Shown piece after piece: positions 11,481 through 45,335 of a DNA stretch of 64,000 nt; within the stretch, counting starts at the first letter, position 1, and every line of letters begins with the position of its first letter. The notes beneath the pieces are model-generated. The model was not told the origin of the DNA, did not search any database, and was given only the letters and a program-made list of their open reading frames with translations. The position numbers and the translations under genes are program-made. The stretch spans positions 124,001 to 188,000 of the IMG/VR virus record IMGVR_UViG_3300044712_002668; one strand, 5' to 3'.

Positions 11481-11781
11481 GATGTTCAAGGGTTGGTTTA
11501 TCGGAGATTTTTTTCCAACACTGGTGTCAACACAAGATGTTGAAGTTGCTGTAAAAAATTATTACAAGGATGATTATGAACCAAGTCATCACCATAAAAT
11601 TGCTAAAGAAATTACAGTAATAGTTGAGGGTCAAGTTAGAATGAATGACTCCATATATAATTCTGGTGATATAATTGTAATTGAGCCAAATGAATCAACA
11701 GATTTCAAAGTACTAAGTGATAAGTGTACCACATGTGTTGTAAAGATTCCTGGGGCTACTAACGATAAATATTTGGACTAA
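11458..11781 (+). CDS. Cupin-fold protein
   Basis: [17 protein letters not shown], VKIPGAxNDKY. Confidence 0.65.
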
Positions 11782-11782
11782 A

Positions 11783-12784: not shown

Positions 12785-13721
12785 TTCGTTTCTTGGGCAT
12801 CATTTGATGCCGTTATTAAAAAATCAAAATCAATTTGTGGTGCTTGCCCCTACAAGACAAGAACTTGACTTGCTAGATGAGCAAGATGTTCTTGGTTATT
12901 TTGATATGTGGGGTCCAAATGTTGTTTTGCATATGGCTGCAGTTTGTGGCGGAATAGGGGCAAACAAAGATAGCCCAGCGGTATTCTTGGAATCTAATCT
13001 TAGAATGGCCACTAACCTCTTTCAAGCAATATCTAAATTTCAAATGGTAGATTGTTTTTATGGGCTTGGTTCGGTTTGTGCTTACCCTAAGTTCACACCC
13101 GTTCCTTTCAAAGAAACAGATATTTGGAATGGAATGCCAGAGGAAACCAATTTTCCCTATGGGCATGCCAAAAGAACCTTGATGTTATTACAGCAAACTT
13201 ATAGGGAACAGTATAACTTGAAAGGGGCACATCTAATCCCTGTCAATATGTATGGAGAATATGATCATTTCTCATTGAGAAATAGTCATGTCATTCCAGC
13301 CTTAATAAGAAAAATTGTAAATGCCAAAGATACTAAACTTTCCTCAGTAGAGGTTTGGGGAGATGGTACCCCTACCAGGGAGTTTTTATATGCTGGGGAC
13401 TGTGCCAAAATTATAGCTCAGGCTGTTTTAAGTAAATTTGATTATAGTGAGCCTATAAATATCGGAACCGGAGTTGATATATCTATATATGACCTAGCTC
13501 ATAAAATCAAGTCTATCATAGGGTATGATGGTGAAATTGTTTTCACTAATGACAAAGATTTGAATGGGCAACCACGAAGGAGATTGGATGTATCAAGAGC
13601 AAAAAGTTTTGGGTTCGTTGCTGAGACTGACCTTGATACAGGATTGCGTCATACCGTGGAATGGTATCAAAAAAACAAATTATCCGGAGCATTGGCTTCC
13701 GAACTTAAGGATGACAAATGA
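12756..13721 (+). CDS. fcl: GDP-L-fucose synthase
   Basis: [43 protein letters not shown]. Confidence 0.9.
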
Positions 13722-29455: not shown

Positions 29456-32400
29456 ATGACAAAACCTAGACAAGAATTTTTGGGTTCTATAAATCTGTTG
29501 GATAAAGCTCTTACTGGGACTATTGATCTGTCATCTGCACGAGTAACCAATGGAGCAGATCCTATAAACAATAAAGACCTTACTACAAAAGAATGGGTAT
29601 TATCTCATATTCCTGCCTCGAACCTTGGGGCAGTATTAAGTTCTGGAAATACAGCAGATGGTTATAATATAGACCTTCAAAATGTATCTAAGGTAATCAA
29701 CTCTCCTGATCCTGTAAATAGTCAAGATCTTGTAACTTTGAATTATTTTACTACTCATACCGGAGGAGTTCCAACATTATCTAATGTTTTGGCTACTGGT
29801 AATAGTACTGGTACTCATAACATTTCCGTTGTAGATGGTTACAAAGTTGTTTTTGGTAATAACGGTCTGGGTGTAGACTCTTACATCTCTGGAGCTGTTG
29901 GTGGAGATTTTCCAGGTACAGTAAATCTTTATGCAAATAACTCTACTATTAAAATTGCTCCAATAGTAAATCCAGCACTTCCTGATGCTAGCGGTCAAAT
30001 ATCAATAACAACATCATCTTACAGCACTCTTACAGGTGGTGGAAAAGAATCTTTATTTTATGTACAGCCAGCATTTTATATTCCGGGTATAACAGTTGAT
30101 ACATGGGGAAGTCCTGGTGGTTTGGGTTACAATGGTATTGGTGGAGGTCTTGGATGGTCTTTGGGAGATGGATATGCTGACTTTTTAGGAGGAAGCATTG
30201 GTTTTAGTGGCGGAGATCATTATACTAACGGTACTTATTCCGTAAAAGATGGTTATGGTGCTACTTGGCAAACGGTAGCTGCAGGTGGTACTTATAGTGG
30301 TCAGTATTGGGATGGTTGGCATGCATTTGGTGGCGCTATTGAGATGTTTCCTCTACACAGAGATCCTGCTAGTACACAGCATGTAACAATTGGTTTTGGA
30401 TCTTTATTGTATGCCAAGACGGTATCTGGAAACGCATACAGCTCACCAAAAGTTACTCCAGTTATCAATGAGCTTTTCTGGAAGCGTCAGGATGATACTG
30501 TTGAGCAGATAACTGGAATGAATTATGCCACCCAAACTTGGGTTGATGGGTACTTTGCATCCTGGGGATTGCCCCAGGTTCTGAACATAAACAGCTCTTC
30601 TGGTGGTTACAGTATAGATCTTGGTAATAACTCAAGAGTTATAAATGCTTTAGATCCTGTTAATAATCAGGACTATACTACAAAGGTATGGGTTACAAAT
30701 CTTGTTGATGGATATTTTGCCGGATGGGGTTTGTCACAAGTTTTGGCAGCAGGAAATTCTTCTGGATCATATGGTATAGATTTAAATAATACCAATAAAA
30801 TTATTAATGCCGCAGATCCTACAAGCCCACAAGATTATGCTACAAAAAACTATGTTGATGGATACTTCTCTTCTTGGGGATTACCAGATGTACTTGGTGT
30901 AAACCAGAACACATCTGGTCATGACATAGCAATGACCACAACTGACAAACTTCAGTTTACTAATGGTTATTTACAAGATAATGGTTCTATAAATATTGTA
31001 GCTGATACAGGTATTGATTTGAATTTGTACGCACCTCAAAATATAATAGCTGGTGCGAACAATAGTATTACCGGAGCATACCATTCTGTAATTTCTGGTG
31101 GTGCTGGAAATACTATATCCTATTCGCTTGCTGATGGGTATAATGTTATCACTGGTGGTAAGCTGGTAAATATAAATAACAGTTCTTACAGTTCTATTAC
31201 TGGCGGATCTTATGCAACCATAAATAATTCAAGCTATTGTTTGTTTGGTGTAGCTGATGGGTATTCTTATATTCAGAATGGTACAAAAACGGCAGTAATA
31301 GTGGGTGGAACCGGGACTACAGCAATTACAAACACTTCTGTTTTAGTAGTTGGTGTGACAGATGGTGGAAATGTAATAGATAGCGTATCTAATAGTTTTA
31401 TAGGATCAATAGATTCTGGCGTTACTGTTCAAGGCTCTTCAAATCATGTGTTTGTTGGTACAACACATAATGGTAGTAACATCAATGCCGCAACAGATGT
31501 GTTTATAGGATCTACAACAAATACAGATATAACTACAGTTAACAATTCTTTTGTAGCTACTGGAAACGCCTCATCATTAACCAATACAGATCATATATTC
31601 ATAGGAGCGGTAGATAATGCTACCGTTACTGGAGGTTCTCATTTATTTGTTGGAGCAGGATCTTCTCCAACATTTAATACTAGCACGACTTATACGGGTA
31701 TAGGTATTGTAGGTAGTTCTACAACTATAACATCAACTAGTAATAGTTTTATTGGGCATTCCAGTAATACTTTTCCATCAAATCTTAATACTGTTTTCAT
31801 TGGTTCTAGTGTTAATAACAGTACATCAATACAAAATATATCTTATTCAGCAATTGGATCTGCCTATGTTAATGGTGATATAAAGAGTTCTTCAAATATA
31901 TTTGCAGGAAATATTTCATATGGTGGAGGTGTAGTATTATCAAACAATACTTTTGCTGGATGTCTAACAAATGGGGCTTATGTTAAAAATATACCTGATA
32001 GCTCTATAGTTTTAGGAATTAATGGTTCATATATAGCTAAAGGATTGAAACTACAAGATAGCAATACACTTATCCGTTGGAAATTAGATGAAACATCTGG
32101 TCCTTGGTATAATAGTGGTACTAGTGGGTCTCTTGATCTTAATACTATTGGTGGGACCGTAGGTACTGGTGTTGGTGTAGAAGGAAATACTTTACTTGGA
32201 AATGCTATAAGTATTACTCCAGGAAATGGTGCGGTTTATACTGGTGATACAAGTGTACAGCCGACAGGTTCAGCTCTTACAGTGTCTGCTTGGGTAAAGT
32301 TAAATAGTTATACTTCTGGAGGAATGTTTGTTTGTAAGAAATATGATATAGCATCTGCTGGTTGGTCTGCTCCATATGCTACAATATACTTAGGTTTGAC

Positions 32401-34525
32401 AGGTGCTCTTGATGGTACTTGGCTTACTGGCGTGACGGTTGGCGGCACTCTTACACAGCCAACAATATCAAGCACTATACCACTTGGCACATGGACTTTA
32501 GTATCAATTACATTTGATGGAACCAATCTTAGAACATATTTGAACGGAAGTTTGGTAGACACTACTGCTGTTACTGGCGGACCAGGAGCGCTTGATTATG
32601 GAAATAATGGTCCATGGTCTTTGGGTGACTATATAGCTTCAAGTGCATTAGGTGGACAAATTCTTGATGGATTAGTTGATGATGTTAGAATTGAAGGTGT
32701 AGTTAGAAGCGCTAGTTATCTTTTGGGATTATACAATTCACAAAGCCCTTATGCACAGGGATGTTTTATAGGTACAGGAAGTACAGCTCAAATATATAAT
32801 AGTGATAGAGCTTTTATAGGAACAGCGGTATCTAGCTACATAAACGAATCATCATATTCTGCAATGGTAAGCGCAGCAAATAGCGCGTTTATGTATGACT
32901 CTGATTATGCATTTATGGGTGCAGTGTCTAATGGATCTAATATATCAAGTTCTGATAATGCTGCTATAATAGCATCTACAAACGGTTCATATATATCTAA
33001 CTCACAAGGTGCATTTATTGGTACGGCTAATTATGGAACAAACGTAAATGGCTCGGCAAATGCAGCTATCGTTGCTGGATCTAATGGTGCAAACATATTG
33101 AATTCTGCAAATGCTTTTATGGGTACGCCAGATCATTCAGCCTATATTACAGCATCGCCGCATGGGGTTATGGTCTCCCCTAATAACAGCTCTTATTTGG
33201 ACACTTCTCCACTTTCATTTATAGGAACGGCTAGCTCGGCTTCATATATCTCAGGGTCAAGTAGCGCATTCATGGGAGCTGTGGATAATGGTGCTCATAT
33301 AATAAATTCAAGTTTTGCAAGCATTCTTTCTGGAAATGGTGGTGCGGTGGTAATAACCGGATCTGCCGGATCTTCCATGATAAATACAACCAATGGTTGC
33401 TACATTGATACATCTCCACGTTCAACCATTATAAATGGCGACTATACATCATATATATTGAACTCTACTGGAAGTTTCCTTGGAGGAGTTACTAACGGAT
33501 GTTATGTAAGTGGTGGAACATATTCTGCCGTTGTCAGCGGTTCTAACAGCCATGTAATTACATCAAACTACTCATCTATCACCTCTGGTATCAATCATAT
33601 AATCGATACGTCTAGTGATGCATTTATAGGAGGTGGAGATACTAATCAGATTACTAGCGTTTCTGATTACGCAGCTATAGTGTCTGGTAGATTTGGAACA
33701 ATAACAGCCAGTGCAAATGCGTTTATAGGAAGCGGGTCTCAAAATACAATCTTAACAAGTAGCGGAAATTCTGCTATATTGGGTGGATCTAGCAACACAA
33801 TAACAAGCTCAACAGAAGCAGCAATAGCTAGCGGTAATAGCTGTTCAATAACCTCTGCTCAACTCAGTTTTATTGGAGGTGGGGCTACCAATTCTATTAG
33901 TAACTCTACTCAGTCATTTATTGGAAATGGTTATGGAAACAATATCTCGGCTACAGGTGGGGAGTTTAATGCAATTGTTGGTGGACAAGTTGGTTCAATA
34001 ACAGCCGGATCAAGCTCAACAATTATTGGTGGTTACAATAACAGAATTGATAACAGCTATTGTGTAATCAGCGGTAAAGATGGTTATGCCAGAATGTATG
34101 GTCAAGAGGTCAGGGCTAATGGTTATTTCTCAAGCCAAGGTGATGCTCAAAAATCAGAAATAATAGTAAAGGGTACAGCTGCAGCCGGAGTAGCTTTTGA
34201 TTTATATACTACCACTACTACAGAGATAGTTTTTGAAGACGGAAAGACCTATGATATATCTGTAAAGATTGTTGCGGTAGATATTACTGATGGAACAAAG
34301 AGAGCAAGGTGGTCATATGATGTTTTGGCCCATCAAACCGCTGGAACAATTACTATAGATGATTCTACCTTGATTTCAAGTGTAACAACTGGTACTGATT
34401 GGGCGGTTACCATAAGCAATGGTGGTGGATCATTGTTCAGGATAAGATTAGATGCATCTGCTGACGCTACTAGAGATAGAAGGGCCATGGCCACAATAGA
34501 ATGGAGAGAGATTAGAGCGGTATAA
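29456..34525 (+). CDS. Large putative tail fibre/appendage protein (repeats, beta-helix, LamG domain)
   Basis: Repeated 'L..VL..GN...IDL.N...IN..DP...QD..TK' units, ~21-aa xFIG/AAIxG solenoid repeats, LamG-like 'TVSAWVK...WTLVSITFDG...YLNG...DDVRI'. Confidence 0.75.
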   Translation: MTKPRQEFLGSINLLDKALTGTIDLSSARVTNGADPINNKDLTTKEWVLSHIPASNLGAVLSSGNTADGYNIDLQNVSKVINSPDPVNSQDLVTLNYFTTHTGGVPTLSNVLATGNSTGTHNISVVDGYKVVFGNNGLGVDSYISGAVGGDFPGTVNLYANNSTIKIAPIVNPALPDASGQISITTSSYSTLTGGGKESLFYVQPAFYIPGITVDTWGSPGGLGYNGIGGGLGWSLGDGYADFLGGSIGFSGGDHYTNGTYSVKDGYGATWQTVAAGGTYSGQYWDGWHAFGGAIEMFPLHRDPASTQHVTIGFGSLLYAKTVSGNAYSSPKVTPVINELFWKRQDDTVEQITGMNYATQTWVDGYFASWGLPQVLNINSSSGGYSIDLGNNSRVINALDPVNNQDYTTKVWVTNLVDGYFAGWGLSQVLAAGNSSGSYGIDLNNTNKIINAADPTSPQDYATKNYVDGYFSSWGLPDVLGVNQNTSGHDIAMTTTDKLQFTNGYLQDNGSINIVADTGIDLNLYAPQNIIAGANNSITGAYHSVISGGAGNTISYSLADGYNVITGGKLVNINNSSYSSITGGSYATINNSSYCLFGVADGYSYIQNGTKTAVIVGGTGTTAITNTSVLVVGVTDGGNVIDSVSNSFIGSIDSGVTVQGSSNHVFVGTTHNGSNINAATDVFIGSTTNTDITTVNNSFVATGNASSLTNTDHIFIGAVDNATVTGGSHLFVGAGSSPTFNTSTTYTGIGIVGSSTTITSTSNSFIGHSSNTFPSNLNTVFIGSSVNNSTSIQNISYSAIGSAYVNGDIKSSSNIFAGNISYGGGVVLSNNTFAGCLTNGAYVKNIPDSSIVLGINGSYIAKGLKLQDSNTLIRWKLDETSGPWYNSGTSGSLDLNTIGGTVGTGVGVEGNTLLGNAISITPGNGAVYTGDTSVQPTGSALTVSAWVKLNSYTSGGMFVCKKYDIASAGWSAPYATIYLGLTGALDGTWLTGVTVGGTLTQPTISSTIPLGTWTLVSITFDGTNLRTYLNGSLVDTTAVTGGPGALDYGNNGPWSLGDYIASSALGGQILDGLVDDVRIEGVVRSASYLLGLYNSQSPYAQGCFIGTGSTAQIYNSDRAFIGTAVSSYINESSYSAMVSAANSAFMYDSDYAFMGAVSNGSNISSSDNAAIIASTNGSYISNSQGAFIGTANYGTNVNGSANAAIVAGSNGANILNSANAFMGTPDHSAYITASPHGVMVSPNNSSYLDTSPLSFIGTASSASYISGSSSAFMGAVDNGAHIINSSFASILSGNGGAVVITGSAGSSMINTTNGCYIDTSPRSTIINGDYTSYILNSTGSFLGGVTNGCYVSGGTYSAVVSGSNSHVITSNYSSITSGINHIIDTSSDAFIGGGDTNQITSVSDYAAIVSGRFGTITASANAFIGSGSQNTILTSSGNSAILGGSSNTITSSTEAAIASGNSCSITSAQLSFIGGGATNSISNSTQSFIGNGYGNNISATGGEFNAIVGGQVGSITAGSSSTIIGGYNNRIDNSYCVISGKDGYARMYGQEVRANGYFSSQGDAQKSEIIVKGTAAAGVAFDLYTTTTTEIVFEDGKTYDISVKIVAVDITDGTKRARWSYDVLAHQTAGTITIDDSTLISSVTTGTDWAVTISNGGGSLFRIRLDASADATRDRRAMATIEWREIRAV

Positions 34526-34538
34526 ATAAAGGTGTGGT

Positions 34539-34964
34539 ATGGCTAATAGAAAAACAATCATAATAGTTGATGAGGCAATTGTTGATGGATATGTTCTAAC
34601 ATACTCATCTATAGATGGATATTTCAAACCATTGCCAGCTTCTGGCGGTATTGCGCCAGCAACAGTAACAGATGTATCATCCCCAACCTATACTGTAACT
34701 GCTTATGATTTCAACCAACGTTTTAGAATGCTATACAACGGAAGTAGCTGTCAGGTTACATTGCCAGCAGCGGCATCTTTAACAGAAGGTTCTACTTGGA
34801 CATTTAAAGATGTAGATGGATATGCTGGAACTTATACTTACAGTGTGGTTGCCGGGGCTAATACAACAATAGACAAGGCTAGTAGCTGGACATTCCCATC
34901 AGCTCCCTATACCGCTCTTAGCCTTGTATATCATAGTTTGTCTGCAAACTGGGAAGTTATTTAG
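34539..34964 (+). CDS. Putative virion structural protein
   Basis: 'VTLPAAASL..G....FKD.DG' fibre-associated pattern; N-terminus resembles that of 38321..43546. Confidence 0.6.
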   Translation: MANRKTIIIVDEAIVDGYVLTYSSIDGYFKPLPASGGIAPATVTDVSSPTYTVTAYDFNQRFRMLYNGSSCQVTLPAAASLTEGSTWTFKDVDGYAGTYTYSVVAGANTTIDKASSWTFPSAPYTALSLVYHSLSANWEVI

Positions 34965-36484
34965 TAGTTGATAAACTTAATCATTCTCCAAGTATTTGCC
35001 GAAGCATTTGCGCAAATATAAAACTCTCCAGTAGTACTTTTTCTAACCTCACAGTTGCCTGGGTTGGCAGGAAAAGCTGCGTCTGGAAATACGGTCAAGG
35101 CACTAGAGTCAAAGGCTGTAGAGTATACTTTACGTCCCGTAGTGATTCTTATTTCATCTAAACATCCATCAAGATAAGTATAGACAGATCCTGTATAGTA
35201 TTTACCAAAGCGTAATACTGGATAGAATCTAGTTATATTGTAATTTAATGAACCTGTAGAATATTTAGTGCCATTGACATACAGAGCTAGACATGATTGA
35301 TCCGTTGTACCTATAAATTCTCTTTGTATAGCTACATGGCTCCATGTATTAAGTGATATAGCAGAGGATTGTACGCTTACAAAGGTTGTATCAGTTCCCA
35401 TATATGCCGTTACAACACCATTTGATTCTAGTTTCAAATATACACCAACCAATCCTGCTGAATAATCCTGATAGAATATGGCTGATCCAGAGGCGTTGAA
35501 AGCTCTTGGATAAACCCAAGTTTCTATTGTCCATTCTTCAAAGCCTGCGTTTACTACAGTATCGCATATATTCACTTCAAGCACAGAGCTTGTACCATTG
35601 AAATCCAAAGATGCATTACCGAATTTATTGATTGAAGTGTTATAGGTCGTATTTATTAAAGCATAACAAGCTGGATATAATCCAAAGTTCATTCCATACA
35701 TTTTGTTATATTGATCGGCATAGTACGCTTGCGATCTTATTGTATTTTCTACACGAACATCCCAGATAGTAGCTTTACTTGTACCATTTCCCTGATCTCC
35801 TAAAACAGAATATTGTCCATGTGTTCCGTATGAGACTGGGGTTCCTGGCGTAGTATATTCTGTTCCAACCAAGCTTCCATTCATATATACTTTTAATAGA
35901 CCCAGCGATGCATCGTATGTCATTGACAGCAAATACCATGCATTTAAAGATAGCATGTGATCTGTAATAAGTATAACAGTACGAGATGATACTCCAAAAG
36001 CTACACCAGCATACCATCGTCCATTATTAGAGTCTGATATACCAATACCCCAGGACTCCCAGGGGCCAGTCCATGAGTTATCAGCTCTATATGATTTGTC
36101 AACAAAAGCTGCCCAACTGGAACTGAAACTATCAAGCTTTACCCAGAAACTTACAGACAGTGTGTTTGTATATTCACCTACAGAAGTGTATCCTGAACCG
36201 AGGCGGCATGTACCGTTGTTTGAGTTTACTGCGGTAGGGCTTGCTCCAAGAGGGCTATTTACTATTGTTGGAGTTCCGAAATCTTTTCCTAAACTTAGTG
36301 TTCCTGCATTACCTGTATTGACCCATGGTGAATCATTTTCACCCAATAGCCATTGGATACCAGTATAACCATCTACAGCCACAGTTGAGCTAGTAGTGGT
36401 GTTACAGTGAGCGTGATACATTGTATGTAATGTTGGCAGATTTGAATCAGTTAGCGGAATTCTTTGTGGTGGAAAGTAACTCAT
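34961..36484 (-). CDS. Double LamG/ConA-like domain protein
   Basis: Two jelly-roll motif sets (SVSFWVK...YMNG...WDVRVE; WTIETWVYP...WSHVA...LDEIRIT). Confidence 0.75.
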   Translation of the reverse strand: MSYFPPQRIPLTDSNLPTLHTMYHAHCNTTTSSTVAVDGYTGIQWLLGENDSPWVNTGNAGTLSLGKDFGTPTIVNSPLGASPTAVNSNNGTCRLGSGYTSVGEYTNTLSVSFWVKLDSFSSSWAAFVDKSYRADNSWTGPWESWGIGISDSNNGRWYAGVAFGVSSRTVILITDHMLSLNAWYLLSMTYDASLGLLKVYMNGSLVGTEYTTPGTPVSYGTHGQYSVLGDQGNGTSKATIWDVRVENTIRSQAYYADQYNKMYGMNFGLYPACYALINTTYNTSINKFGNASLDFNGTSSVLEVNICDTVVNAGFEEWTIETWVYPRAFNASGSAIFYQDYSAGLVGVYLKLESNGVVTAYMGTDTTFVSVQSSAISLNTWSHVAIQREFIGTTDQSCLALYVNGTKYSTGSLNYNITRFYPVLRFGKYYTGSVYTYLDGCLDEIRITTGRKVYSTAFDSSALTVFPDAAFPANPGNCEVRKSTTGEFYICANASANTWRMIKFINY

Positions 36485-37377
36485 AGGTTTCCTCTTACAT
36501 ACCGTAAATCCATACCAGTATCATCAAGCCTTGTCCAAATATTAGATGCGTTTTTAATTGTTAAAGCATTATAACCATCTGGTTTAATTTCTCCAATGGT
36601 AGCTGATGCTGATGATATAGAATCTGTAAAAGCTTGAGTTGGTGCTAGAAAGTTCTTTGCAAGGATACCTGAGTCATAGAAATTACCACCACGATACCAA
36701 GTGTATCCGCTTGTAATTCTTACTTCATCAAGCCTGCCTGTTAAATATAAACCATTATGTGGATAGTATCCCATATACAAATCATATGGAGAATTGAAAG
36801 TATCAGTTGGTAACAACTTAACATAGTTCGTTTGCATTGCACCGTTTATAAACATTATTAGGAAATTGTTATCCCTACATATTGCTACGTGATTCCATAC
36901 ATTCAGTGGTAAAGTAGAGCTTGATAGGAGAACAGGTTTCCATGAGAAAATCCCGTTAAGAGTGTATAGAAAACCAATAAGAGGATCTGCCGGGTTACTG
37001 GTAGTAGCAAGATACCAACCTCTTTGATCCGCATTTGATGAGCAATTTATTATTGGTTTATCACTTGATTGTTGTGGAATGTTTATCCAGAACTCTATGG
37101 TAAAGTCTTTGTTAGATAAATTAACTATTCTGTCAAATTCTCCACAGTATACAGATCCGCCCCCACCAAAATAAAAACATCCAGTTCCAAATTTTGGATT
37201 TGTGGCATCAATTATAGCGTTTCCTAGCATGTTCAAAGTGTTATTATATATTGATGAGTCTACAGTGTTTGTTTGACCTTGTGTACCATTGGCATGACAA
37301 TGTAATTTGACATATTGACTATGTAAATTAGTATCTGTTGTAGCTGGTTTGAAATATGTTGGAGGTATATATGTCAT
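36481..37377 (-). CDS. LamG/ConA-like domain protein
   Basis: LHCHANG...DSS, KFG, DFTIEFW, WNHVA, FING, LDEVRIT. Confidence 0.8.
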   Translation of the reverse strand: MTYIPPTYFKPATTDTNLHSQYVKLHCHANGTQGQTNTVDSSIYNNTLNMLGNAIIDATNPKFGTGCFYFGGGGSVYCGEFDRIVNLSNKDFTIEFWINIPQQSSDKPIINCSSNADQRGWYLATTSNPADPLIGFLYTLNGIFSWKPVLLSSSTLPLNVWNHVAICRDNNFLIMFINGAMQTNYVKLLPTDTFNSPYDLYMGYYPHNGLYLTGRLDEVRITSGYTWYRGGNFYDSGILAKNFLAPTQAFTDSISSASATIGEIKPDGYNALTIKNASNIWTRLDDTGMDLRYVRGNL

Positions 37378-38222
37378 AGCACTCCTTTGAATACGGTGTT
37401 CTTTATTTGCTTCCAGGTTGGCGCAACAATATCAGTACACATATAAACATTTCCATATGCATCTTGTTTCATATCACCGACAAATGTAGCGGCTGGCATA
37501 ACAGGATTTGTCAATGGACCTGGCGTGAAATCTGCTGTATATAAAGCTTGGCCAATTGTAATACGAACATCATCAACATAACCATACATGCTTTTTTGTC
37601 CGCCAGGAAATGGTGAGTAATATCCTATATTCCAATTTGCACTTGATCTCATTAAAAATTTAGAATCTACTGGAATAGTATTTTGTAGTTGACCATTTAG
37701 ATACATTTTTATACTAGTAGTACTATTATTTCGTACAACGGCTACATGATACCATTGGTTTGTAGTAAATGCGCTTGAGCCTATTGCTGCCACCCAATTA
37801 TTTGTCCCCTTCCTAGCCCATATAAACAAAAATATGTTATTATCAGTAATCAATATAGGACCTTGTTGATCAGCGTCAGTATAACTACAAAGAAACGCTT
37901 GGTATCCAATATTTACTTGTGTGGGATATATCCACATTTCAATTGTGAAATCTTTATCATCAAAATTTAAAAGACCCCTACTATTATCCAGAGTTACTTT
38001 GTTTGTTACAGTGCCATCAAAATAAAGAGATGACGATCCATATTTATATACTGATGTAGATATTACAGCCGAACCAGAAGCAGTGTATGTTTTGTTATAC
38101 AAACTGCTATCTGTCATTGCTTGAGATCCATTAGTTCCTTCACAATGAAATAGTGTTTTTGTATAAAACGCAGAGAAATCTGCAATTGGTACTTTGGGTG
38201 GCATTGGTGGAATGTAAGTCAT
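37374..38222 (-). CDS. LamG/ConA-like domain protein
   Basis: FHCEGTNGS...DSS, KYG, DFTIEMW, WYHVAVVR, YLNG, VDDVRITIG. Confidence 0.8.
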   Translation of the reverse strand: MTYIPPMPPKVPIADFSAFYTKTLFHCEGTNGSQAMTDSSLYNKTYTASGSAVISTSVYKYGSSSLYFDGTVTNKVTLDNSRGLLNFDDKDFTIEMWIYPTQVNIGYQAFLCSYTDADQQGPILITDNNIFLFIWARKGTNNWVAAIGSSAFTTNQWYHVAVVRNNSTTSIKMYLNGQLQNTIPVDSKFLMRSSANWNIGYYSPFPGGQKSMYGYVDDVRITIGQALYTADFTPGPLTNPVMPAATFVGDMKQDAYGNVYMCTDIVAPTWKQIKNTVFKGVL

Positions 38223-38320
38223 TACATAAATACTTCGTTATTGGCACAGTGGTTTTTTCGTTTAAGCATACATATGGATAGTTTTACATAGAGTTGTAGT
38301 TTACAATAGCGGGCAAATGC

Positions 38321-41300
38321 ATGACAAATAGGCAAACTGTTATAATCCCTGATGGCGTTGTTTATCCAGACGGTTACGTGGTTACATATGAATTATCTAC
38401 AGATTCGTTTGTGCCAAAATCACCATTGACTGTGATAGGACCTACTGGTCTGGGGTATTCAGGTTTAACAACAAGCAATACTTTTGCTTCAAATGCTACA
38501 GGCACTTTGTTTCTCACTACAAACAAGTCCGCATCAGAGTTGGCTTTCAGTACAGGTGATAGAATCAGAGTTAGTTCTACCAATGTTACTACTGATTATG
38601 TAGAAGGTGTTATCACGTCATTTGTTGGTACGTTATTGACGTTGCCAATTGATAGAAGTTCAGGTTCTGGAACACATTCAAGCTGGAATATTGGATTGGT
38701 AGGTGATGTTGGAGCCACTGGATCTACAGGAGCCACAGGGTCTGCAGGAAACACAGGCCCAACCGGCCCTACAGGTCCAACTGGAGCTACCGGCCCTACA
38801 GGACCAACAGGACCATTATCAACAGTATTGGCAGTTGGCAATACCACTGATGGATACAATATTGTACTTACCGGATCTGATAGATTGTCAACTAGTGCTG
38901 GTTATCTTGCAAAATCAGGAACACAGATACAGTTATACGGTCTTGATGGTGTTACAGGACTAGATGGATATTCTGTTTATATTCATTCAGGAAATTCTAC
39001 GGATGGATACTCTGGTACTGCTGCTTTAATATCGGCAGCCACTTCTGGTGTTAGCGCTGGCGGTTTGAATATTTACACAGGTAGTTATGGAAGTTATGGC
39101 GGGGCTGCAAGCGTTAATGTTAATGGCGCAAGCTCTTCCGGTTCTGCATATTGGTATTTCAACTCTGGTGGTTTCGGGGGTAGTACAGGGTCTACTTTTC
39201 AATTAGGGTATGCATCACCAACTTCGTCATATGGATGGGGACTTACAGGAGGCAGGTTTAACAGTATTGTAGGAACCGGTGCCTCTATTGAGGGAGATGC
39301 TGTTACAGCATCTCAAGGGTCTAGAATATACATGAGCACCGGTATTTCAACCGATGGGTATACCGGATCATCATTAACACTTGGAAGAGCTATTAATGGA
39401 ACTAATGCTGGTAGTTTCAATTTATATACAGGAAGCTATGGAAGTTATGGTGGTGCTGCTAGTGTAAACGTTAATGGGGCAAACTCCTCTAGTTCTTCTT
39501 ATTGGTATTTTAGTTCTGGAGGGTTTGGTGGAAGTACCGGGTCTACTTTTCAACTTGGATATTCTTCAGATACATCGGCATATGGATGGGGTTTAACAGG
39601 AGGTAGATTTAATAGCGTTGTAGGAACTGGAGCGTCTATTGAAGCGGATTCAGTTACAGCATCTCAAGGCGCTCAGATATACATGAATACAGGAACCTCT
39701 ACTGATGGTTATAGCGGAGTAGCTATAACATTAGGAAGGGCTGTTAATGGAACACAGGCTGGTGGTTTAAACCTGTATACTGGAAATTATGGAAGTTATG
39801 GTGGAGGGGCAAACGTAAACATTAATGGAGCAACAAATTCAAGCTCTGCTTATTGGTATTTCAATTCTGGAGGGTTTGGTAGCAATGCAGGCTCTAGTTT
39901 TCAGCTTGGTTATTCAACACCAACATCAGCGTATGGTTGGAAACTTGCTGGAGGAAAGGTAGGAGGAATTAGCACTACGGGAGCATCTATTGAGGGAGAT
40001 GCCGCCACCACAACTCAAGGTGCTCAGATACAGATGAGTACTGGTATATCAACTGATGGTTATAGTGGTACGCAGTTAACATTGGGAAGGGCTATTAATG
40101 GAACTAATGCTGGTAGTTTAAACCTGAGCACTGGAAATTATGGAAACTATGGTAAAAGCGCCAGCGTGAATATCAATGGAGCAAACATCTCCACCTCTGC
40201 ATATTGGGCTTTCAATTCTGGAGGATTTGGATCACATACAGGATCTAGTTTTAGACTGGGGTATGCAGATGCGACACAATCTGATGGCTGGGCTTTAACT
40301 GGTGGCAATTATAACGGAGTAAGTGATACTGGTGCTAGTTTCTCAGGATCTTCTGCATTATCAACAAATGGTTCAAACATAACTCTTACATCTGGAAAAT
40401 CTACTGACGGGTACTTGGCAGCTACAGTAAACGTATTTGGTGGTAATAACTCTACTAGAGATGGTTATGTTGATATCAATTCTTGGTTGATGTTGAGAAG
40501 AAAGTCAGCGCCTGTCGGTTTAACAAACACTTTATATGCGAAGTCAGCTACAAATGAACTTCATTGGATAGATAACACTGGTAGTGATAATATCATATCT
40601 CCACCAGGATCGGGACCCACCGGCCCAACAGGTCCAACAGGAGCAACTGGGCTTGGATATGCTGGAAATCAGGCGATTAGCCCCAACGTCCTTTTGCCTT
40701 TCACAGGTTCCCAGGTTTTCACCTGCACACAGAATGCTGGGACTAACGCTTTTGCTGCTGGAACCTACATAAGACTAGCCCACCCAACCACCCCTTCGAC
40801 GGATTTCATGTTGGGTACGATCACAGCCTATGCCCCTAACGGGGATATGACTGTTAACGTAACGTACAGCACCCAGAACGTGGTTAGTAGTTCGGTATGG
40901 GCCATTTCTGTAGCTGGCATTCCTGGGCCTACGGGAGCCACTGGAGCTACAGGCCCAACAGGTGCTACTGGACCCACAGGCCCGGCAATATCAGGTAGTG
41001 ACGGATATGTTCTTCAATATCAAAATACAACACTAACAGCACAATCTGCTTTGTATACAACACCAACTGCAAGGGCAGCGGCACCAACTTTAGGATTTAT
41101 ACGTTCTGCTAATGGTGATTCAATAATAGGTACAAAAACATCTGGTGGTACTAGCTTTACTGCTTTGGGATATGGATCGGCTTCTTCTGATCGTTTGCAG
41201 CTTGGTGATAGCACATCTTGCTCTTTTACAGATATTAGAGCTTCGAGCGCTGTTACTTTTGCAGTGAATGGTAGTGGTGGGTTATATCTTTCAACATCAG

Positions 41301-43546
41301 TATTTCAGCTAAATGGAATACCATTGGATTTGGTTGCGGACACAGCTTATGCTGTTGGTGGTACTATAAAAGCTGTAGGAACAATATCAGGTTACACTGG
41401 AATAGCTGCTAATACAGCCGGTGGGGCTGTAACTATAAAGGGCGGAGATAGATACAACTCTGCTTCTGGCAATAGTGGTGGAAGTGTTAGTATTTTAGGA
41501 ACTGATGGATATAATCCAGGTGCTGTAACAATACAATCTGGATCTGCAACAGGAACAGTTGCAGGGGGTAATGCCCCAACAATCACCATTGCTGGTGGAG
41601 CTGGTAATGCTTATACAGATGGCAGCTCTATAAGTTTATCTGGTGGTGCTGGTGGTGCTGGAAGAAATGGTGGAAGTATTACACTTACATCAGGTGGCGG
41701 CGCCGGTCCAAGCGGTGGTATAACAATACAAACATCATCTTCTGGCGGTATTGCTGGTCCTATTGTTATTCAGACAGGAAACTCATCTACATCAAGTGAT
41801 ATCACTATTCAAGCTCAAGGCGGTTCTAGTGGTAACGTTAATATTTACACTTCTGCAGGAAGTACTGCTGGAAATATAAATATCAAAGCAGCACTTGGTG
41901 GTTCATCAGGCGGTGGAGGAAATGTAAATCTTTCTTCTTGTAGCGGTACAACGGGTACAGCAGCATCTTTATCATTAATAGCGGCAAACAATACTACTGC
42001 TGTAAATGCTGATGGTCAGATAAGTATGATTGGCGCACAGATAATATCTGCCAACATGATAAAATCAAGACAGTATCCAAACGATAGCAATACTCAGCTT
42101 TGGTATAAACTTGATGAAACAGGAACACCTTGGGCTAACTCTGGAGCGCTTGGCACATTGAATATGACAAAAACAGGAGCTAGCACAGTATCAGTTGTGC
42201 CAGGTTTATTTGGAACAAATGCCGTTTTGTTTACTGCAGGAAACTCTTCTATATTGACTACAGGAGCAACCTCATTAGGAGAATATTCCACTTTCACACT
42301 TTCGTTTTGGGGTTATTTGAACTCATATTCGAGCGGAGGAATATTTGTAATAAAGCATTATTGGTTGGCCTCTAGTATTTGGGGAACGCCATATGGTTTG
42401 ATTGTATCTCTGGATGGTGGTGGAGTGGGTGGATGGATGATTAACGTTCCAGATAATTCTGGAACCACACAACATCAAACTGTTATGCCTACAAAGCTAC
42501 CACTAAAGAAATGGATACATATAGGAATGACAGTTGACGGCTCTAATAACATAAACCTATATCAAAACGGAGCTTTAGTATATTCAGCAGCTCTTGGGTA
42601 TACAGTAGGATATGGAAGTACTCATGGTGCTTGGAATATAGGAGGATATGTAGCTTCAAATGCTGTTGGTCAGCCATTGGACGGCATTGTTGAGGATGTT
42701 AGGATGGAAAACGTTGTAAGAAATCCTAAGTATTTCTCTGATGTTTATGGAATGGGTATAGGTAAGATTATGTATGATGGAAGTACTGCTGCTGATACTA
42801 ATACATATCTAAAATGGACATTTGACGAACAGAACGGACCTTGGGCACATAGTGGAAGTTATGGTAGTGCTTTATCTATGGCTTCCGGTCAAGGAACAAC
42901 AAATATAGTTCCAGGAATAATTGGAAGCGGAATAAATACATCAAATGGTCATGTTCTAACGGCTGCTACTAGCGTTTCCCCAGGAAACACATTTACAGTT
43001 TCAGCTTGGGTTTATCTTTACAACTACATATTAGCAACGGCAGATAATCAGCAAGGAATCATTGTATCAAAGAATTATAATACTGCATCATGGGGAAATC
43101 CATTTATTTCAATACATATGGAGTTAACAAATGATCGTGATGGTTCTTGGACGGCTTATGTAAATAACGGATCTCTTAACTCAATTACTATTCAAGAGCC
43201 TTTCAAAATACCTCTAAACACATGGTCTTTGGTAGCTATAACATATGACGGATCATCTTTTAAAGCATATCTGAACGGAGTTTTGGCAGGATCAATACCT
43301 GTAACTGGAAATGTAAATTATGGAAATAATGGACCATGGATGGTTGGTGGTCACTCATGGGTATCTCCGTACCAATTTTTTGATGGTGTTATTGATGATG
43401 TTAGGATTGAAAACACTGTAAGAAGTGCGGCTTATTTGCAGGCAATGTATCAAAAAGCTTTTGCTGGTATAACATATGTAGATAGGGACGGAAATTTGGT
43501 GTATCAATCACCAAATGGCACTATCTCTGTAATGGGAGCTGGTTGA
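38321..43546 (+). CDS. Large collagen-containing fibre protein with tandem repeats and two C-terminal LamG domains
   Basis: GPT/GAT collagen triplets, 117-aa repeats, Gly-rich 'GG.I.I..G' repeats, two LamG motif sets. Confidence 0.8.
38996..40399 (+). repeat. Four tandem 351-nt (117-aa) in-frame repeats
   Basis: STDGY codons start at 38996, 39347, 39698, 40049, 40400 (exact 351-nt period). Confidence 0.9.
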
Positions 43547-43558
43547 TTCGGAGAAATT

Positions 43559-44203
43559 ATGTCTTTAGGAGTAACAAAATCACAATCATATTCTGGAGAG
43601 TTCAGATCTACAGTAATTAGACCAGGCTCTTCCGCAGACGCATTCACTATAATGACTATAAACATTTCTAAGCTTCCATTGGTTTTTAATGATCTATGTA
43701 ACGTGTTCATAGATGCTACAATTATGTTTAGTAAATATACAACAACAAATGGTCGTCATGTTATGGCAACATATACTGGTGGAATGCAGAAAAGCATGAG
43801 AGCTTTTTACGATCCAACACTAACATATCCTTTTTCTAATACTCCGTCACAATCTGCAACAGCCACAAGACTTATGACATATAAAGGTGGTGATTGCGAT
43901 CCTGATATGTCATTTCAAATCAGAACTGGAGCAAGTACAGATTTAGATTTGTATAATTGGGGTTATTACATACCAGATAATTCTGGAGGCGGTTCTGCAA
44001 ACGTTCTTACAGAAACCGTTGGTAGATTGAACTTTTCAACAAGATCAACCAAAGACATATCAACAGCGGAGCCTAATAGCGTAAATATAAACTGTGCAAG
44101 TCTTGCTAGTACTGCAAATTATTCATTACCAGCAACTACCGTTATAAATTATAGCTGTATTGCAAAGGTAGTTGTTGTGCAGGCTAATTTGTATGGAGCG
44201 TAA
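43559..44203 (+). CDS. Hypothetical protein, probably structural
   Basis: GGAG RBS, Ser/Thr-rich, follows the fibre gene. Confidence 0.6.
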   Translation: MSLGVTKSQSYSGEFRSTVIRPGSSADAFTIMTINISKLPLVFNDLCNVFIDATIMFSKYTTTNGRHVMATYTGGMQKSMRAFYDPTLTYPFSNTPSQSATATRLMTYKGGDCDPDMSFQIRTGASTDLDLYNWGYYIPDNSGGGSANVLTETVGRLNFSTRSTKDISTAEPNSVNINCASLASTANYSLPATTVINYSCIAKVVVVQANLYGA

Positions 44204-45000
44204 TGAAAGCTAGTAAGATCATTATAATATGTCCATTTTCACGTCCAGAATTTGCAAAAAGTGTATATGATAATTTTTTAAGACAAGATTACCAAAATAA
44301 AGAGCTTATCATAATAGAAAATGGCAAAGCAATTGGAGCTTGGAAATATCCAACAGGAACTGTTTTACAATCTGCTAATCACCAAGCTGCTGCAAAAAAC
44401 AAAGGGCTTGAATATATTGGAGATAAATTCAAAGGACAATTCTGGACCACTTGGGATGATGATGATTATTATGGAGCCAATCAATTATCAGAACTGGCAG
44501 AAAACTCTGATAAAGCTGATGTTGTTGGAAAATTGAATATTTTTATGAGAGCCAGCAATGGTAAGTTACGATTTATAGATATGGGTGCTGAGAATGATTT
44601 TGTGGAATCTCTTTGGGGTTGTTCAATATCATCATGGATACAAGATGTAGAATTCCCTGATACTGGAGTGTGGGGAGAGGATCTTTCTTGGATTGATATA
44701 ATGAAAGGTAATGGAGCAAAGCTCTGGGCTACATCTAGGTACAACATCTGCATAAACCGTTTTCATGGGAATAATACTTGGAAAACAACAGATCAGAATA
44801 TTGTAAATACTAGCAAAGAAGTATTTGAGTATGATTTTGATCTTGATATTGTAAATAATATAAAACAAGTAGATGGTAAGTTGATAGATAGAAATACAGA
44901 GTTTGATTTTTCTCATATGGAAGAGATGATTGATCATTCATTTTTTGATAAGTTTATAGAAGAAAGTTTGAAGGGAGATATATGTCTGGTAAAATCTTAA
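44203..45000 (+). CDS. Glycosyltransferase family 2
   Basis: RQDYQNKELIIIEN, WDDDDYY, GED. Confidence 0.8.
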   Translation: MKASKIIIICPFSRPEFAKSVYDNFLRQDYQNKELIIIENGKAIGAWKYPTGTVLQSANHQAAAKNKGLEYIGDKFKGQFWTTWDDDDYYGANQLSELAENSDKADVVGKLNIFMRASNGKLRFIDMGAENDFVESLWGCSISSWIQDVEFPDTGVWGEDLSWIDIMKGNGAKLWATSRYNICINRFHGNNTWKTTDQNIVNTSKEVFEYDFDLDIVNNIKQVDGKLIDRNTEFDFSHMEEMIDHSFFDKFIEESLKGDICLVKS

Positions 45001-45335
45001 CACCAACAGATGGGTATACAATAAACAGTGGATATTTTACAGTTTCTGGGGAACTAGATTCTGTTGATGGTTATGCTTGGATTTTTATGGGAAGGAGTGA
45101 TTATCACTATCTGATGTGGCCAAAGATACAAGTACCTATGGGAAATTTTTCAGTATCTGTTTTTGAAGGTGGGGATCCTGGTGCTGTGGTGTGTAGGTTG
45201 GTACAGGTAAATCAGCATGACCATGAACGTTGCTTGGCAGCTTATACTACCGATGAAGGTATTCACTGTCCTGATTTTATTCAATTTGATTTTGTTAATT
45301 TGAATAAGATTGGCGATAGAATGATTAAACCTTAA
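44982..45335 (+). CDS. Hypothetical protein with two DGY motifs
   Basis: GGAG RBS, 117 aa. Confidence 0.55.
   Translation: MSGKILTPTDGYTINSGYFTVSGELDSVDGYAWIFMGRSDYHYLMWPKIQVPMGNFSVSVFEGGDPGAVVCRLVQVNQHDHERCLAAYTTDEGIHCPDFIQFDFVNLNKIGDRMIKP

What the first reader, a model, noticed from the sequence alone, without database searches (positions are those of the whole stretch)
29456..45335. Recurrent DGY tripeptide across six otherwise different putative virion proteins
By hand I count about 28 DGY: 10 in 29456..34525, 3 in 34539..34964, 1 each in 34961..36484 and 36481..37377, 11 in 38321..43546 and 2 in 44982..45335. Some come from internal repeats, but many sit in non-homologous contexts and on both strands, and the motif is rare in the enzyme genes. 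Inference: a recognition tag for post-translational modification (for example Tyr/Ser/Thr glycosylation by the phage glycosyltransferases; a GT2 gene lies at 44203), cross-linking, cleavage, or docking of a decoration protein.
Basis: partly seen in the sequence, partly recalled or inferred. Interest (0 to 1): 0.7.

Follow-up and report, generated by a model that had tools for sequence, protein, structure and literature searches.

The report
Asp-Gly-Tyr motif on phage surface proteins
The outward-facing virion proteins of this giant phage, a relative of Bacillus phage G, and of its many metagenomic relatives carry 12 to 18 times more Asp-Gly-Tyr tripeptides than chance predicts, in unrelated surface loops and next to a large sugar-adding gene island, so this may be a new attachment or recognition site on the virion, though no modification has been shown.

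Summary
The six ORFs hold 10, 3, 1, 1, 11 and 2 DGY (28 in all) against about 1.5 expected. The rest of the window holds 2.

- **Not an artefact.** DGY is the most enriched of all tripeptides. After collapsing repeats, 10-14 independent contexts remain. The signal is at protein level: the DNA motif occurs 94 times in the coding frame and 2-7 times in the other frames.
- **Larger than reported.** The window lies in a 336-kb jumbo phage whose closest cultured relative is Bacillus phage G. A second virion module holds 52 DGY against 4.4 expected. The other 76,000 aa of the genome show no enrichment. Relatives share the trait in the same protein families.
- **Where it sits.** DGY is found in outer parts (decoration protein, outer sheath domain, distal baseplate, fibres). 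It is absent from inner parts (capsid, probable tube, baseplate wedge). Sites favour indel-prone loops, and they are gained and lost between relatives.
- **Chemistry.** The Tyr is almost never exchanged for Phe, unlike other Tyr columns. The Asp is exchanged for Asn but not Glu. This fits an Asx-Gly turn showing a chemically specific Tyr.
- **Context.** An island of about 20 kb follows the virion module. It holds GT4, GT2, GT11 and GT1-like genes and a GDP-fucose pathway.

A glycan acceptor site is my preferred reading (about 0.3) but is unproven. Ligand-binding or purely structural turns remain open.

The parts
29456..34525 (+). 1689-aa fibre-like protein with 10 DGY. The DGY codons lie at 29657, 29834, 30167, 30248, 30545, 30707, 30857, 31133, 31256 and 34079 (first base of each 9-nt site).
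   Evidence: ORF and counts. Pfam gives Laminin_G_3 at aa 923-1086 and a weak T7 tail-fibre N-terminal match. Three sites (aa 364, 418, 468) belong to one internal repeat (...TKxYV-DGY-FxxWGL...); the others are separate contexts. The N-terminal 650 aa have only 3 weak partial homologues among 5.8 billion proteins.
34539..34964 (+). 141-aa protein with 3 DGY, at 34584, 34614 and 34815.
   Evidence: Its N-terminal 35 aa are 46% identical to the N-terminus of the 38321 protein (E 1e-5). There is a weak PHROG tail-fibre hit and no homologue in relatives G001-G005.
34961..36484 (-). 507-aa Laminin_G_3 protein with 1 DGY, at 36365-36373.
36481..37377 (-). 298-aa Laminin_G_3 protein with 1 DGY, at 36571-36579.
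   Evidence: PHROG hits go to baseplate-wedge and virion structural families through the Laminin_G_3 domain.
37374..38222 (-). 282-aa Laminin_G_3 paralogue with no DGY. It belongs to the same receptor-binding module.
38321..43546 (+). 1741-aa collagen-like fibre protein with 11 DGY, at 38369, 38849, 38963, 39002, 39353, 39704, 40055, 40406, 40460, 41000 and 41504.
   Evidence: Pfam gives Collagen at aa 128-164 and two Laminin_G_3 stretches, the best at aa 1540-1704. Five sites are equivalent positions of a 117-aa internal repeat. That repeat region has no homologue among 1.84 billion representative proteins.
44203..45000 (+). 265-aa putative family-2 glycosyltransferase inside the fibre module.
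   Evidence: Pfam PF00535, E 5e-5, 23.6 bits against a cut-off of 23.3. It has a 31% identical homologue in relative G001, which lies directly after a 305-aa protein with 3 DGY.
44982..45335 (+). 117-aa protein with 2 DGY, at 45009 and 45066.
   Evidence: No family hit and no homologue in relatives.
417..13721 (+). The part of a ~20-kb glycosylation island that lies in the window. It follows the main virion module. In the window it holds GT2, GT11 (fucosyltransferase family), a GT1-like protein, an FkbM methyltransferase, a HAD hydrolase, nucleotidyltransferases, GDP-mannose 4,6-dehydratase and a GDP-fucose-synthase-like epimerase.
   Evidence: Pfam. Upstream of the window the island continues with one GT4/GT1 and three GT2 genes (genome 116991-121494). 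It is syntenic in relative G001. In relative G002 it is reduced to the GT4 homologue.

Best explanation
DGY is a real short linear motif of the outer virion surface in a clade of jumbo myoviruses related to phage G.

Shown:
- The motif is selected at protein level.
- It occurs in many unrelated contexts.
- It lies preferentially in indel-prone loops of outward-facing proteins: head decoration, outer sheath domain, distal baseplate and fibres.
- It is gained and lost quickly between relatives, while a few sites are invariant.
- Its Asp behaves as an Asx-turn residue (exchanged with Asn, not Glu).
- Its Tyr is selected for its own chemistry (almost never exchanged with Phe).

Inferred:
- An Asx-Gly tight turn displays the Tyr hydroxyl at the tip of a surface loop.
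- The single most likely use is as acceptor or recognition site for glycosylation of the virion by the phage's own glycosyltransferases. These would be the GT4/GT2/GT11 and GDP-fucose island that follows the virion genes, and perhaps the GT2 at 44203. On this reading DGY would be a Tyr-based sequon whose number per protein evolves as sequons do in other viral glycan coats.
- The glycosylation step is not shown.
For: Enrichment and specificity:
- 28 against 1.5 expected in the six ORFs; top tripeptide of all.
- 10-14 independent contexts remain after de-replication.
- The signal is specific to the coding frame.
- Genome-wide: 52 against 4.4 in the 46-117 kb virion module and 28 against 1.6 in the fibre module, but 14 against 11.6 elsewhere.
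- There is no flanking consensus.

Clade-wide, and consistent by family:
- G001 92 against 16.5, G005 75 against 7.4, G004 41 against 2.5, G002 34 against 16.7, always in the virion bins.
- Families with DGY have it in every genome. Capsid, probable tube, the gp25-like baseplate protein and the 1740-aa protein have none in any genome; the gp6-like baseplate protein has none in G000 or G002 and 1-2 in G001 and G005.

Turnover:
- Of 102 DGY columns in 11 family alignments, 11 are invariant and about half are unique to one genome.
- One orthologue has 16 where this genome has 3.

Loops:
- 63% of sites lie within 3 columns of an indel, against 31% for the background (P 9e-17).
- In the moderately confident part of the sheath model (pLDDT 64-86), all three DGY lie in loops between beta bridges.

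Chemistry:
- Phe makes up 9% of the replacements at DGY tyrosines and 43% at other Tyr columns (Fisher P 2.6e-7).
- Asp is replaced by Asn (36%) and hardly ever by Glu (3%).
- DGF is not enriched although Phe is as frequent as Tyr.

Glycosylation context:
- The island is described.
- GT2 number follows DGY excess in the 8 near-complete genomes (Spearman 0.96).
- Phage G has no GT2 above the cut-off and only a mild DGY cluster.
- G002, which lacks GT2, has fewer DGY in 5-6 of 8 shared families.

Precedents from the literature:
- Phage-encoded virion glycosylation in mycobacteriophages (Freeman 2023, as cited in PMC12619734).
- Tyr-linked glycans in Firmicute S-layers (PMC2943079).
Against: - No modification can be seen from sequence.
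- No DGY sequon is known, and the full-text search found no paper on it.
- The link between GT2 number and DGY load rests on essentially one phylogenetic split. Within the DGY-poor subclade, genomes with 2 GT2 and with 0 GT2 differ little (21 and 31 against 18-20).
- Genomes without GT2 still show about 6-fold enrichment in their virion bins.
- Non-virion proteins show no avoidance of DGY (14 against 11.6). A promiscuous cytoplasmic enzyme that reads a bare tripeptide might be expected to cause such avoidance.
- Some sites (DGYGN in the sheath domain, invariant in 17-24 sequences) look like fold-determining loops.
- Tyr is the least conserved of the three positions.
- The island could instead modify DNA or host polysaccharide. 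Both structure models were poor overall (pLDDT 55 and 45), and solvent exposure was not measured.
Confidence: 0.3

Rival explanations
1. Adhesive or ligand-binding turns. The exposed Asp and Tyr at loop tips form many weak binding sites, for example for host cell-wall glycopolymers or capsule. This would be similar in spirit to the Tyr/Gly/Asp/Ser-rich loops of antibodies. The motif is unmodified.
For: - Same surface-loop location and same restriction to outer proteins.
- Tyr is specific and cannot be replaced by Phe.
- Tandem expansions occur in loops, such as DGYYTDGYYDGYPIDGY in an orthologue of a small virion protein.
- The motif is densest in receptor-binding fibres with Laminin_G_3 domains.
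- This reading explains enrichment in relatives without GT2.
Against: - No three-residue binding motif of this kind is known to me.
- It does not explain why DGY load follows the size of the glycosylation island.
- Binding sites usually need a defined pocket, yet there is no flanking consensus.
Confidence: 0.25
2. A purely structural preference. Asx-Gly-Tyr is simply a favoured tight turn or strand start in the all-beta, Gly/Thr-rich outer proteins of this lineage, with no role beyond folding.
For: - Residues before Asp and after Tyr are often beta-branched or Gly (T, I, V before; G, V, A, T after).
- Asp exchanges with Asn as in Asx turns.
- DGYGN loops are invariant in the sheath domain.
- There is a mild excess in phage G fibres (14 against 2.2, 6 of them in one repeat).
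- In the models DGY lies in loops or at a loop-to-strand junction.
Against: - A packing aromatic should exchange with Phe, and this one does not. DGF is not enriched.
- The excess lies only in the full tripeptide, not in DG or GY alone.
- Sites are gained in parallel across unrelated proteins of the same genome (Friedman P 0.03), which points to a genome-level factor.
- The annotated virion proteins of T4 have only 5 DGY.
Confidence: 0.2
3. Another chemistry on the Tyr (cross-linking between virion proteins, phosphorylation, nucleotidylation or sulfation) or a docking site for an accessory protein.
For: - Tyr specificity and surface location fit any chemistry directed at Tyr.
- The island holds a 516-aa protein with weak kinase-like and nucleotidyltransferase-like matches.
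Against: - No candidate enzyme of these classes was identified. That 516-aa protein fits sugar activation better.
- These options were not examined further.
Confidence: 0.1
4. An artefact of internal repeats, amino-acid composition, a DNA-level signal or protease sites.
For: - Some sites are repeat copies: 5 in the 117-aa repeat of 38321 and 3 in 29456.
- The proteins are rich in Gly and Tyr.
Against: - 10-14 contexts remain against 1.5 expected.
- Shuffles never exceed 7.
- The motif is specific to the coding frame.
- G+C content of relatives ranges from 33 to 45% and the trait is the same.
- Capsid and other inner proteins have none, while the sheath and fibres have many, which does not fit prohead protease sites.
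Confidence: 0.02

Closest known systems
Short bacterial glycosylation sequons: D/E-X-N-X-S/T of the Campylobacter N-linked system and D-(S/T)-(A/I/L/V/M/T) of the Bacteroidota O-linked system (recalled from general knowledge, not tested here).
   Same: A very short motif with an acidic residue just before the acceptor. It occurs on exposed loops of many unrelated surface proteins, and its number varies between relatives.
   Different: Here the candidate acceptor would be Tyr. The known systems act outside the cytoplasm through oligosaccharyltransferases, whereas phage virions assemble in the cytoplasm. No glycan has been shown here.
Virion glycosylation by phage-encoded glycosyltransferases in mycobacteriophages (Freeman et al. 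2023, as cited in PMC12619734).
   Same: Glycosyltransferase genes sit beside structural genes, and outer virion proteins are the proposed targets.
   Different: There the glycans sit at the C-termini of capsid and tail-tube subunits. Here the capsid and the probable tube have no DGY, and the motif is internal and on other proteins. The island here is far larger and includes a GDP-fucose pathway.
Tyrosine O-glycosylation of S-layer proteins in Paenibacillus and Thermoanaerobacter (PMC2943079).
   Same: Tyr serves as glycan acceptor on a bacterial-world surface protein. The closest cultured relative of this phage infects a Firmicute.
   Different: S-layer glycans are transferred outside the cell by an oligosaccharyltransferase. 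No consensus around the Tyr is given in the review I read. The host of this phage is unknown.
Bacillus phage G (Donellivirus), the closest cultured relative (capsid protein 54% identical).
   Same: A jumbo myovirus with a related capsid. Its large distal tail proteins gp420-gp431 show a mild DGY excess (14 against 2.2).
   Different: Six of its 14 sites belong to one repeat (...DGYWYVRG). It has no GT2 above the Pfam cut-off and no genome-wide enrichment comparable to this clade (52 against 19 control matches).
Asx-Gly tight beta-turns (general protein structure knowledge).
   Same: Asp or Asn followed by Gly, flanked by beta-type residues. The models place the motif in loops.
   Different: Ordinary turns do not demand Tyr after Gly, do not exclude Phe, and are not enriched 12-18 fold in one functional class of proteins.

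Membership tests
Protein glycosylation sequon | A glycan is covalently attached to the motif's acceptor residue. | not testable with these tools
   This needs virion mass spectrometry or glycan staining.
Protein glycosylation sequon | A short motif that recurs in unrelated proteins independently of fold or repeat. | tested here: met
   10-14 independent contexts in the six ORFs. No flanking consensus. 17 DGY-bearing proteins in the main virion module.
Protein glycosylation sequon | The motif lies on exposed, flexible parts of surface proteins. | tested here: inconclusive
   The motif is enriched near indels (63% against 31%) and lies in loops in the usable part of the sheath model. It occurs in outer and not in inner virion parts. 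Solvent exposure was not measured and the models were poor.
Protein glycosylation sequon | A cognate transferase is encoded and co-varies with the motif. | tested here: inconclusive
   The island holds at least 8 glycosyltransferases. GT2 number against DGY excess gives rho 0.96 with n=8, but this is about one phylogenetic contrast. Genomes without GT2 keep a weaker enrichment.
Mycobacteriophage-type virion glycosylation | Glycans sit on the C-terminal tails of the major capsid and tail-tube proteins. | tested here: not met
   The capsid (genome 46848-47888) and the probable tube (86944-87624) have no DGY in any genome. Their C-termini were not examined for other acceptor residues.
   Only 5 sites of 38321 and 3 of 29456 are repeat-equivalent. 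The rest are in unrelated flanks and in unrelated protein families.
Asx-Gly beta-turn | Asp/Asn-Gly in a loop between beta elements, with Asp exchangeable with Asn. | tested here: met
   Asn makes up 36% and Glu 3% of the replacements of the Asp. Flanks are beta-type. The models place the motif in loops.
Prohead protease cleavage motif | Sites lie in head proteins that are processed (capsid N-terminus, scaffold, internal proteins), not in tail parts. | tested here: not met
   The capsid has none. The sheath, the baseplate and the fibres have many.
DNA-level signal (restriction, methylation or recombination site) | The motif is enriched regardless of reading frame and strand. | tested here: not met
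   94 in the coding frame, against 2 and 7 in the other sense frames, 6 antisense and 3 intergenic.

The most novel reading that the evidence does not exclude
DGY is a previously undescribed tyrosine-based sequon. A clade of phage-G-like jumbo phages would use a self-encoded glycosylation island, with fucose among the sugars, to attach sugars to Tyr at the tips of Asx-Gly turns on the head decoration protein, the outer sheath, the baseplate periphery and the fibres. This would build a glycan coat whose density evolves by gain and loss of the tripeptide.
Probability: 0.25. Interest if true: 0.85.

Novelty: new variant of a known kind. Interest (0 to 1): 0.68.

Why it matters
If the tyrosines are modified, this would be the first sequon-like motif defined for a bacteriophage virion and a rare case of Tyr-linked protein glycosylation. 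It would also be predictable from sequence in hundreds of uncultured jumbo phages. It would give a function to the large glycosyltransferase islands that many jumbo phages carry, and it would bear on host recognition, virion stability and immune recognition.

If the tyrosines are unmodified, the motif still marks which parts of these largely unannotated virion proteins face outward. It would then point to a minimal Tyr-presenting loop used for adhesion.

Either way the finding gives a simple bench test: mass spectrometry of DGY peptides and Tyr-to-Phe mutants.

Tried and rejected
- **Composition artefact.** Rejected by shuffles.
- **Repeat artefact.** Rejected by flank clustering.
- **DNA-level motif.** Rejected by frame counts.
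- **Extended consensus or hydrophobic periodicity around DGY.** None found.
- **General property of phage virion proteins.**
  - A six-frame count on the T4 virion region gave 10 against 2.7, but only 5 lie in annotated structural proteins.
  - The first 50 kb of phage G give 2 against 1.7.
- **Diversity-generating retroelement.** Considered and dropped: the Gly codons include GGA and GGG, and the sites are spread over dozens of genes.
- **Homologues for the six window proteins.** Almost none exist, so no alignment-based structure was possible for them.
- **PDB by sequence.** Nothing useful.
- **Structure predictions.**
  - The sheath family gave mean pLDDT 55; only aa 100-280 are usable.
  - The 495-aa protein encoded just after the capsid gene (genome 49405-50892) gave pLDDT 45.
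  - Foldseek on the sheath model was uninformative.
  - The ESM Atlas look-up of the sheath outer domain gave only weak leads.
- **Literature.** No paper mentions a DGY motif or DGY with tail fibres. The paper on Tyr O-glycosylation sites (PMC4397588) is not held.
- **DNA-glycosylation route.** No thymidylate-synthase-like or hydroxymethylase gene in this genome record, which is 78% complete. This is weak evidence only.
- **Homologue of the island's GT4 in cultured phages.** Essentially none.
- **Hydroxyl generalisation (DG followed by Ser or Thr).** Not supported once composition is taken into account. Only Tyr is enriched, about 9-fold, against 1.0-1.5 for Thr, Ser, Val, Ile and Phe.
Full report
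**The observation**

The nucleotide positions of all 28 sites were checked by translation. The other ~15,400 aa encoded in the window hold only two DGY.

The six proteins are rich in Gly (13.6%) and Tyr (5.4%), but composition predicts only 1.5 DGY. In 5,000 per-protein shuffles the total never exceeded 7. Of all tripeptides, DGY is by far the most enriched (P about 1e-25). It is followed by FIG and the collagen triplets.

The motif is cooperative. 28 of 49 DG are followed by Tyr, 28 of 51 GY are preceded by Asp, and 28 of 35 D-x-Y have Gly in the middle.

I masked the motif and clustered the sites by their 25-aa flanks. This leaves 14 contexts under a strict null and 10 under a lenient one. 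That is still far above expectation (P 4e-6).

**Protein level, not DNA**

All synonymous codons in use for the three residues occur. In the whole genome the DNA pattern GAYGGNTAY is found 94 times in the coding frame. It occurs only 2 and 7 times in the other sense frames, 6 times antisense and 3 times between genes.

**What the six proteins are**

- Four of them, plus the neighbour at 37374-38222, carry Laminin_G_3 domains.
- 38321 has collagen-like Gly-X-Y runs.
- 29456 has a weak match to the T7 tail-fibre N-terminus.
- PHROG matches are to tail-fibre, baseplate-wedge and virion structural families.
- 34539 and 38321 share a 35-aa N-terminus.

This is a receptor-binding fibre module. It is nearly orphan:
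- There are no orthologues in five related genomes.
- The N-terminal 650 aa of 29456 have three weak partial hits among 5.8 billion proteins.
- The 117-aa repeats of 38321 have no hit at all among 1.84 billion representatives.

**The phenomenon is much larger than the finding**

The window is bases 124001-188000 of a 335,988-bp virus record. Genome-wide there are 94 DGY:

| Region | Observed | Expected |
|---|---|---|
| Main virion module, 46-117 kb | 52 | 4.4 |
| Fibre module of the finding | 28 | 1.6 |
| Remaining 76,000 aa | 14 | 11.6 |

DGY is the top tripeptide in both modules and is unremarkable elsewhere. The 46-117 kb region holds the major capsid protein, a decoration-like protein, the tail sheath, and gp25-like and gp6-like baseplate proteins.

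**Relatives**

The capsid protein has 280 relatives at 80-90% identity in IMG/VR, on contigs up to 452 kb. The closest cultured phage is Bacillus phage G at 54% identity. I fetched four relatives in full:

| Genome | Size | G+C | DGY observed | Expected |
|---|---|---|---|---|
| G001 | 392 kb | 43% | 92 | 16.5 |
| G005 | 114 kb | 33% | 75 | 7.4 |
| G004 | 43 kb | 45% | 41 | 2.5 |
| G002 | 447 kb | 39% | 34 | 16.7 |

In each case the DGY are concentrated in the virion bins.

The trait is family-consistent. Families with DGY in this genome have it in every relative. The capsid, the probable tube, the 1740-aa protein (probably the tape measure) and the gp25-like baseplate protein have none anywhere. 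The gp6-like baseplate protein has none in this genome or G002 and 1-2 in G001 and G005. So the motif marks the outer parts: decoration protein, outer sheath domain, distal baseplate and fibres.

**Conservation and turnover**

Some sites are deeply conserved:
- The decoration protein site 52 is DGY in 32 of 32 sequences.
- In the sheath, D222-G-Y-G-N226 is invariant, and sites 198 and 205 are kept in 20 and 17 of 24 sequences.

Most sites are not conserved. Of 102 DGY columns in 11 family alignments, 11 are invariant and about half are unique to one genome. The G001 orthologue of the 2216-aa baseplate protein has 16 DGY where this genome has 3.

In the 495-aa protein encoded after the capsid gene, orthologues carry 1 to 6 DGY. 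Aligned alternatives read AGN, AGE or EAG, so Asp and Tyr come and go together.

Gains run in parallel across unrelated proteins of the same genome. G002 is lower than the others in 5-6 of 8 families (Friedman P 0.03). This suggests a genome-level factor.

A ~100-aa outer sheath domain with three DGY is itself mobile. It is also inserted in the G001 and G005 orthologues of another virion protein (43-48% identity, E 1e-22).

**Where and how the motif sits**

- DGY sites lie within three columns of an indel twice as often as background residues (63% against 31%, P 9e-17). Their flanks are less conserved.
- In the sheath model only residues 100-280 are usable (pLDDT 64-86). There all three DGY lie in short loops between beta bridges.
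- The second model was too poor to use, apart from one site at a loop-to-strand junction.
- Residues before Asp and after Tyr are mostly beta-branched or Gly, and about a quarter of neighbouring DGY pairs are within 10 residues of each other.

Two substitution tests are the most informative.
1. At columns where Tyr is the majority residue, Phe accounts for 43% of replacements in ordinary contexts but only 9% in the DGY context. There the replacements are Gln, Val, Leu, Thr, Ile, Ser and Glu (Fisher P 2.6e-7). DGF is not enriched, although Phe is as common as Tyr in these proteins. The Tyr is therefore not a packing aromatic. It sits at a tolerant, probably exposed, position and is chosen for its own chemistry.
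2. The Asp is replaced mainly by Asn (36%) and almost never by Glu (3%). At other Asp columns Glu takes 17-26%. This is the signature of an Asx turn and not of a charge requirement.

The picture is an Asx-Gly tight turn that displays a Tyr.

**Glycosylation context**

Directly after the last virion gene lies an island of about 20 kb (genome 116991-137721, window 417-13721). It contains:
- one GT4/GT1, four GT2, a GT11 (fucosyltransferase family) and a GT1-like protein;
- an FkbM methyltransferase, a HAD hydrolase and nucleotidyltransferases;
- GDP-mannose 4,6-dehydratase and a GDP-fucose-synthase-like epimerase.

The island is syntenic in G001. In G002 it is reduced to the GT4 homologue.

In the eight genomes that are at least 75% complete, GT2 number follows the excess of the DGY pattern (4-5 GT2: 60-80; 2 GT2: 21-31; 0 GT2: 18-20; Spearman 0.96). 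Phage G has no GT2 above the cut-off and only a mild DGY cluster in gp420-431. Six of its 14 sites belong to one DGYWYVRG repeat.

- The rich and poor genomes form two subclades, so there is about one independent contrast.
- Within the poor subclade the presence of GT2 makes little difference.
- Genomes without GT2 remain about 6-fold enriched in their virion bins.

Its G001 homologue also sits next to a DGY-bearing protein. It could equally serve the collagen-like GPT repeats of 38321. Thr glycosylation of such repeats in Bacillus exosporium BclA is recalled from general knowledge and was not tested here.

The island might instead modify DNA or host polysaccharide. I found no thymidylate-synthase-like gene in this genome record, which argues only weakly against the DNA option.

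**Weighing the explanations**

Repeat, composition, DNA-level and protease explanations are excluded by the tests above. A purely structural turn explains the Asx behaviour and the invariant DGYGN loops. It does not explain the exclusion of Phe, the cooperativity, or the genome-wide parallel gains.

Two functional readings remain: Tyr as an acceptor for the phage's glycosylation system, or Tyr-presenting loops as weak binding sites. I prefer the first because of the island, its position and its co-variation with DGY load. I put it at about 0.3. I put the binding reading at 0.25, the purely structural reading at 0.2 and other Tyr chemistry at 0.1.

What is shown is the motif, its distribution, its loop location and its residue-specific selection. 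Every step from there to a modification is inference.

**Novelty**

No paper in the searched library mentions the motif. Virion glycosylation by phage enzymes and Tyr-linked glycans in bacteria are both known (PMC12619734 citing Freeman 2023; PMC2943079). A sequon-like tripeptide spread over the outer proteins of a phage virion is not. I rate it a new variant of a known kind, conditional on function. It is well worth a mass-spectrometry test.

Noticed in passing
window 417-13721 (continues upstream to genome 116991): A large glycosylation island directly after the virion module. It holds GT4/GT1, several GT2, GT11, a GT1-like protein, an FkbM methyltransferase, a HAD hydrolase, nucleotidyltransferases and a GDP-fucose pathway (GDP-mannose 4,6-dehydratase plus epimerase). 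G+C is lower here (about 31%) than in the rest of the window.
   Followed up: partly
window 38321-43546 (aa 128-165, about 770-780 and 868-890): There are three collagen-like Gly-X-Y runs rich in GPT and GAT. They are separated by a small domain that occurs twice and by five 117-aa repeats. The repeats have no homologue among 1.84 billion representative proteins.
   Followed up: partly
window 29456-34525 (aa 648-1488): The tripeptide FIG occurs 13 times (14 against 1.3 expected in the six proteins). It always appears as ...S/A-FIG-S/T/G... at 16-70 aa spacing. This looks like the repeating coil of a beta-helix, interrupted by the Laminin_G_3 domain.
   Followed up: no
L004:8415-10952 (sheath, aa 170-270), and the G001 and G005 orthologues of genome 72016-73614: A ~100-aa outer domain with two or three conserved DGY(GN) loops is shared between the tail sheath and an insert in another virion protein of relatives (43-48% identity). 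It is a mobile surface domain.
   Followed up: partly
L002:11868-17889 (genome 52667-58688): The two proteins encoded after the capsid gene carry a repeated motif, G-F/Y-N-G-T-T-W-D-R-L/I-R (WDR 12 against 0.5 expected in the module). There is a weak match to DUF6385. These may be head fibre or decoration proteins.
   Followed up: no
L006:6663-9632 (genome 113222-116191): A 989-aa distal virion protein with 8 DGY contains a type I dockerin domain (Pfam E 6e-9), which is unusual in a phage. Two of the DGY sit just before the calcium-binding loops of the dockerin.
   Followed up: no
window 60644-60820 and 62967-63039: tRNA-Ile(TAT) and tRNA-Pro(TGG) genes, plus a third tRNA-like gene for which ARAGORN reports a two-base anticodon.
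   Followed up: no
genome 235717-235926, 281866-282114, 316169-316645 (outside the window): Several small ORFs (69-82 aa) are extremely rich in Gly, Tyr and Cys (for example ...GGDGYGYGDGYCGYRW...). They account for some of the few DGY outside the virion modules.
   Followed up: no
whole record G000: IMG/VR labels the 336-kb record 'provirus'. Its gene content and its relatives (up to 452 kb, one with direct terminal repeats) look like a lytic phage-G-like jumbo myovirus. The same fibre protein is on record from a 454,833-bp contig, so the record is probably incomplete.
   Followed up: no
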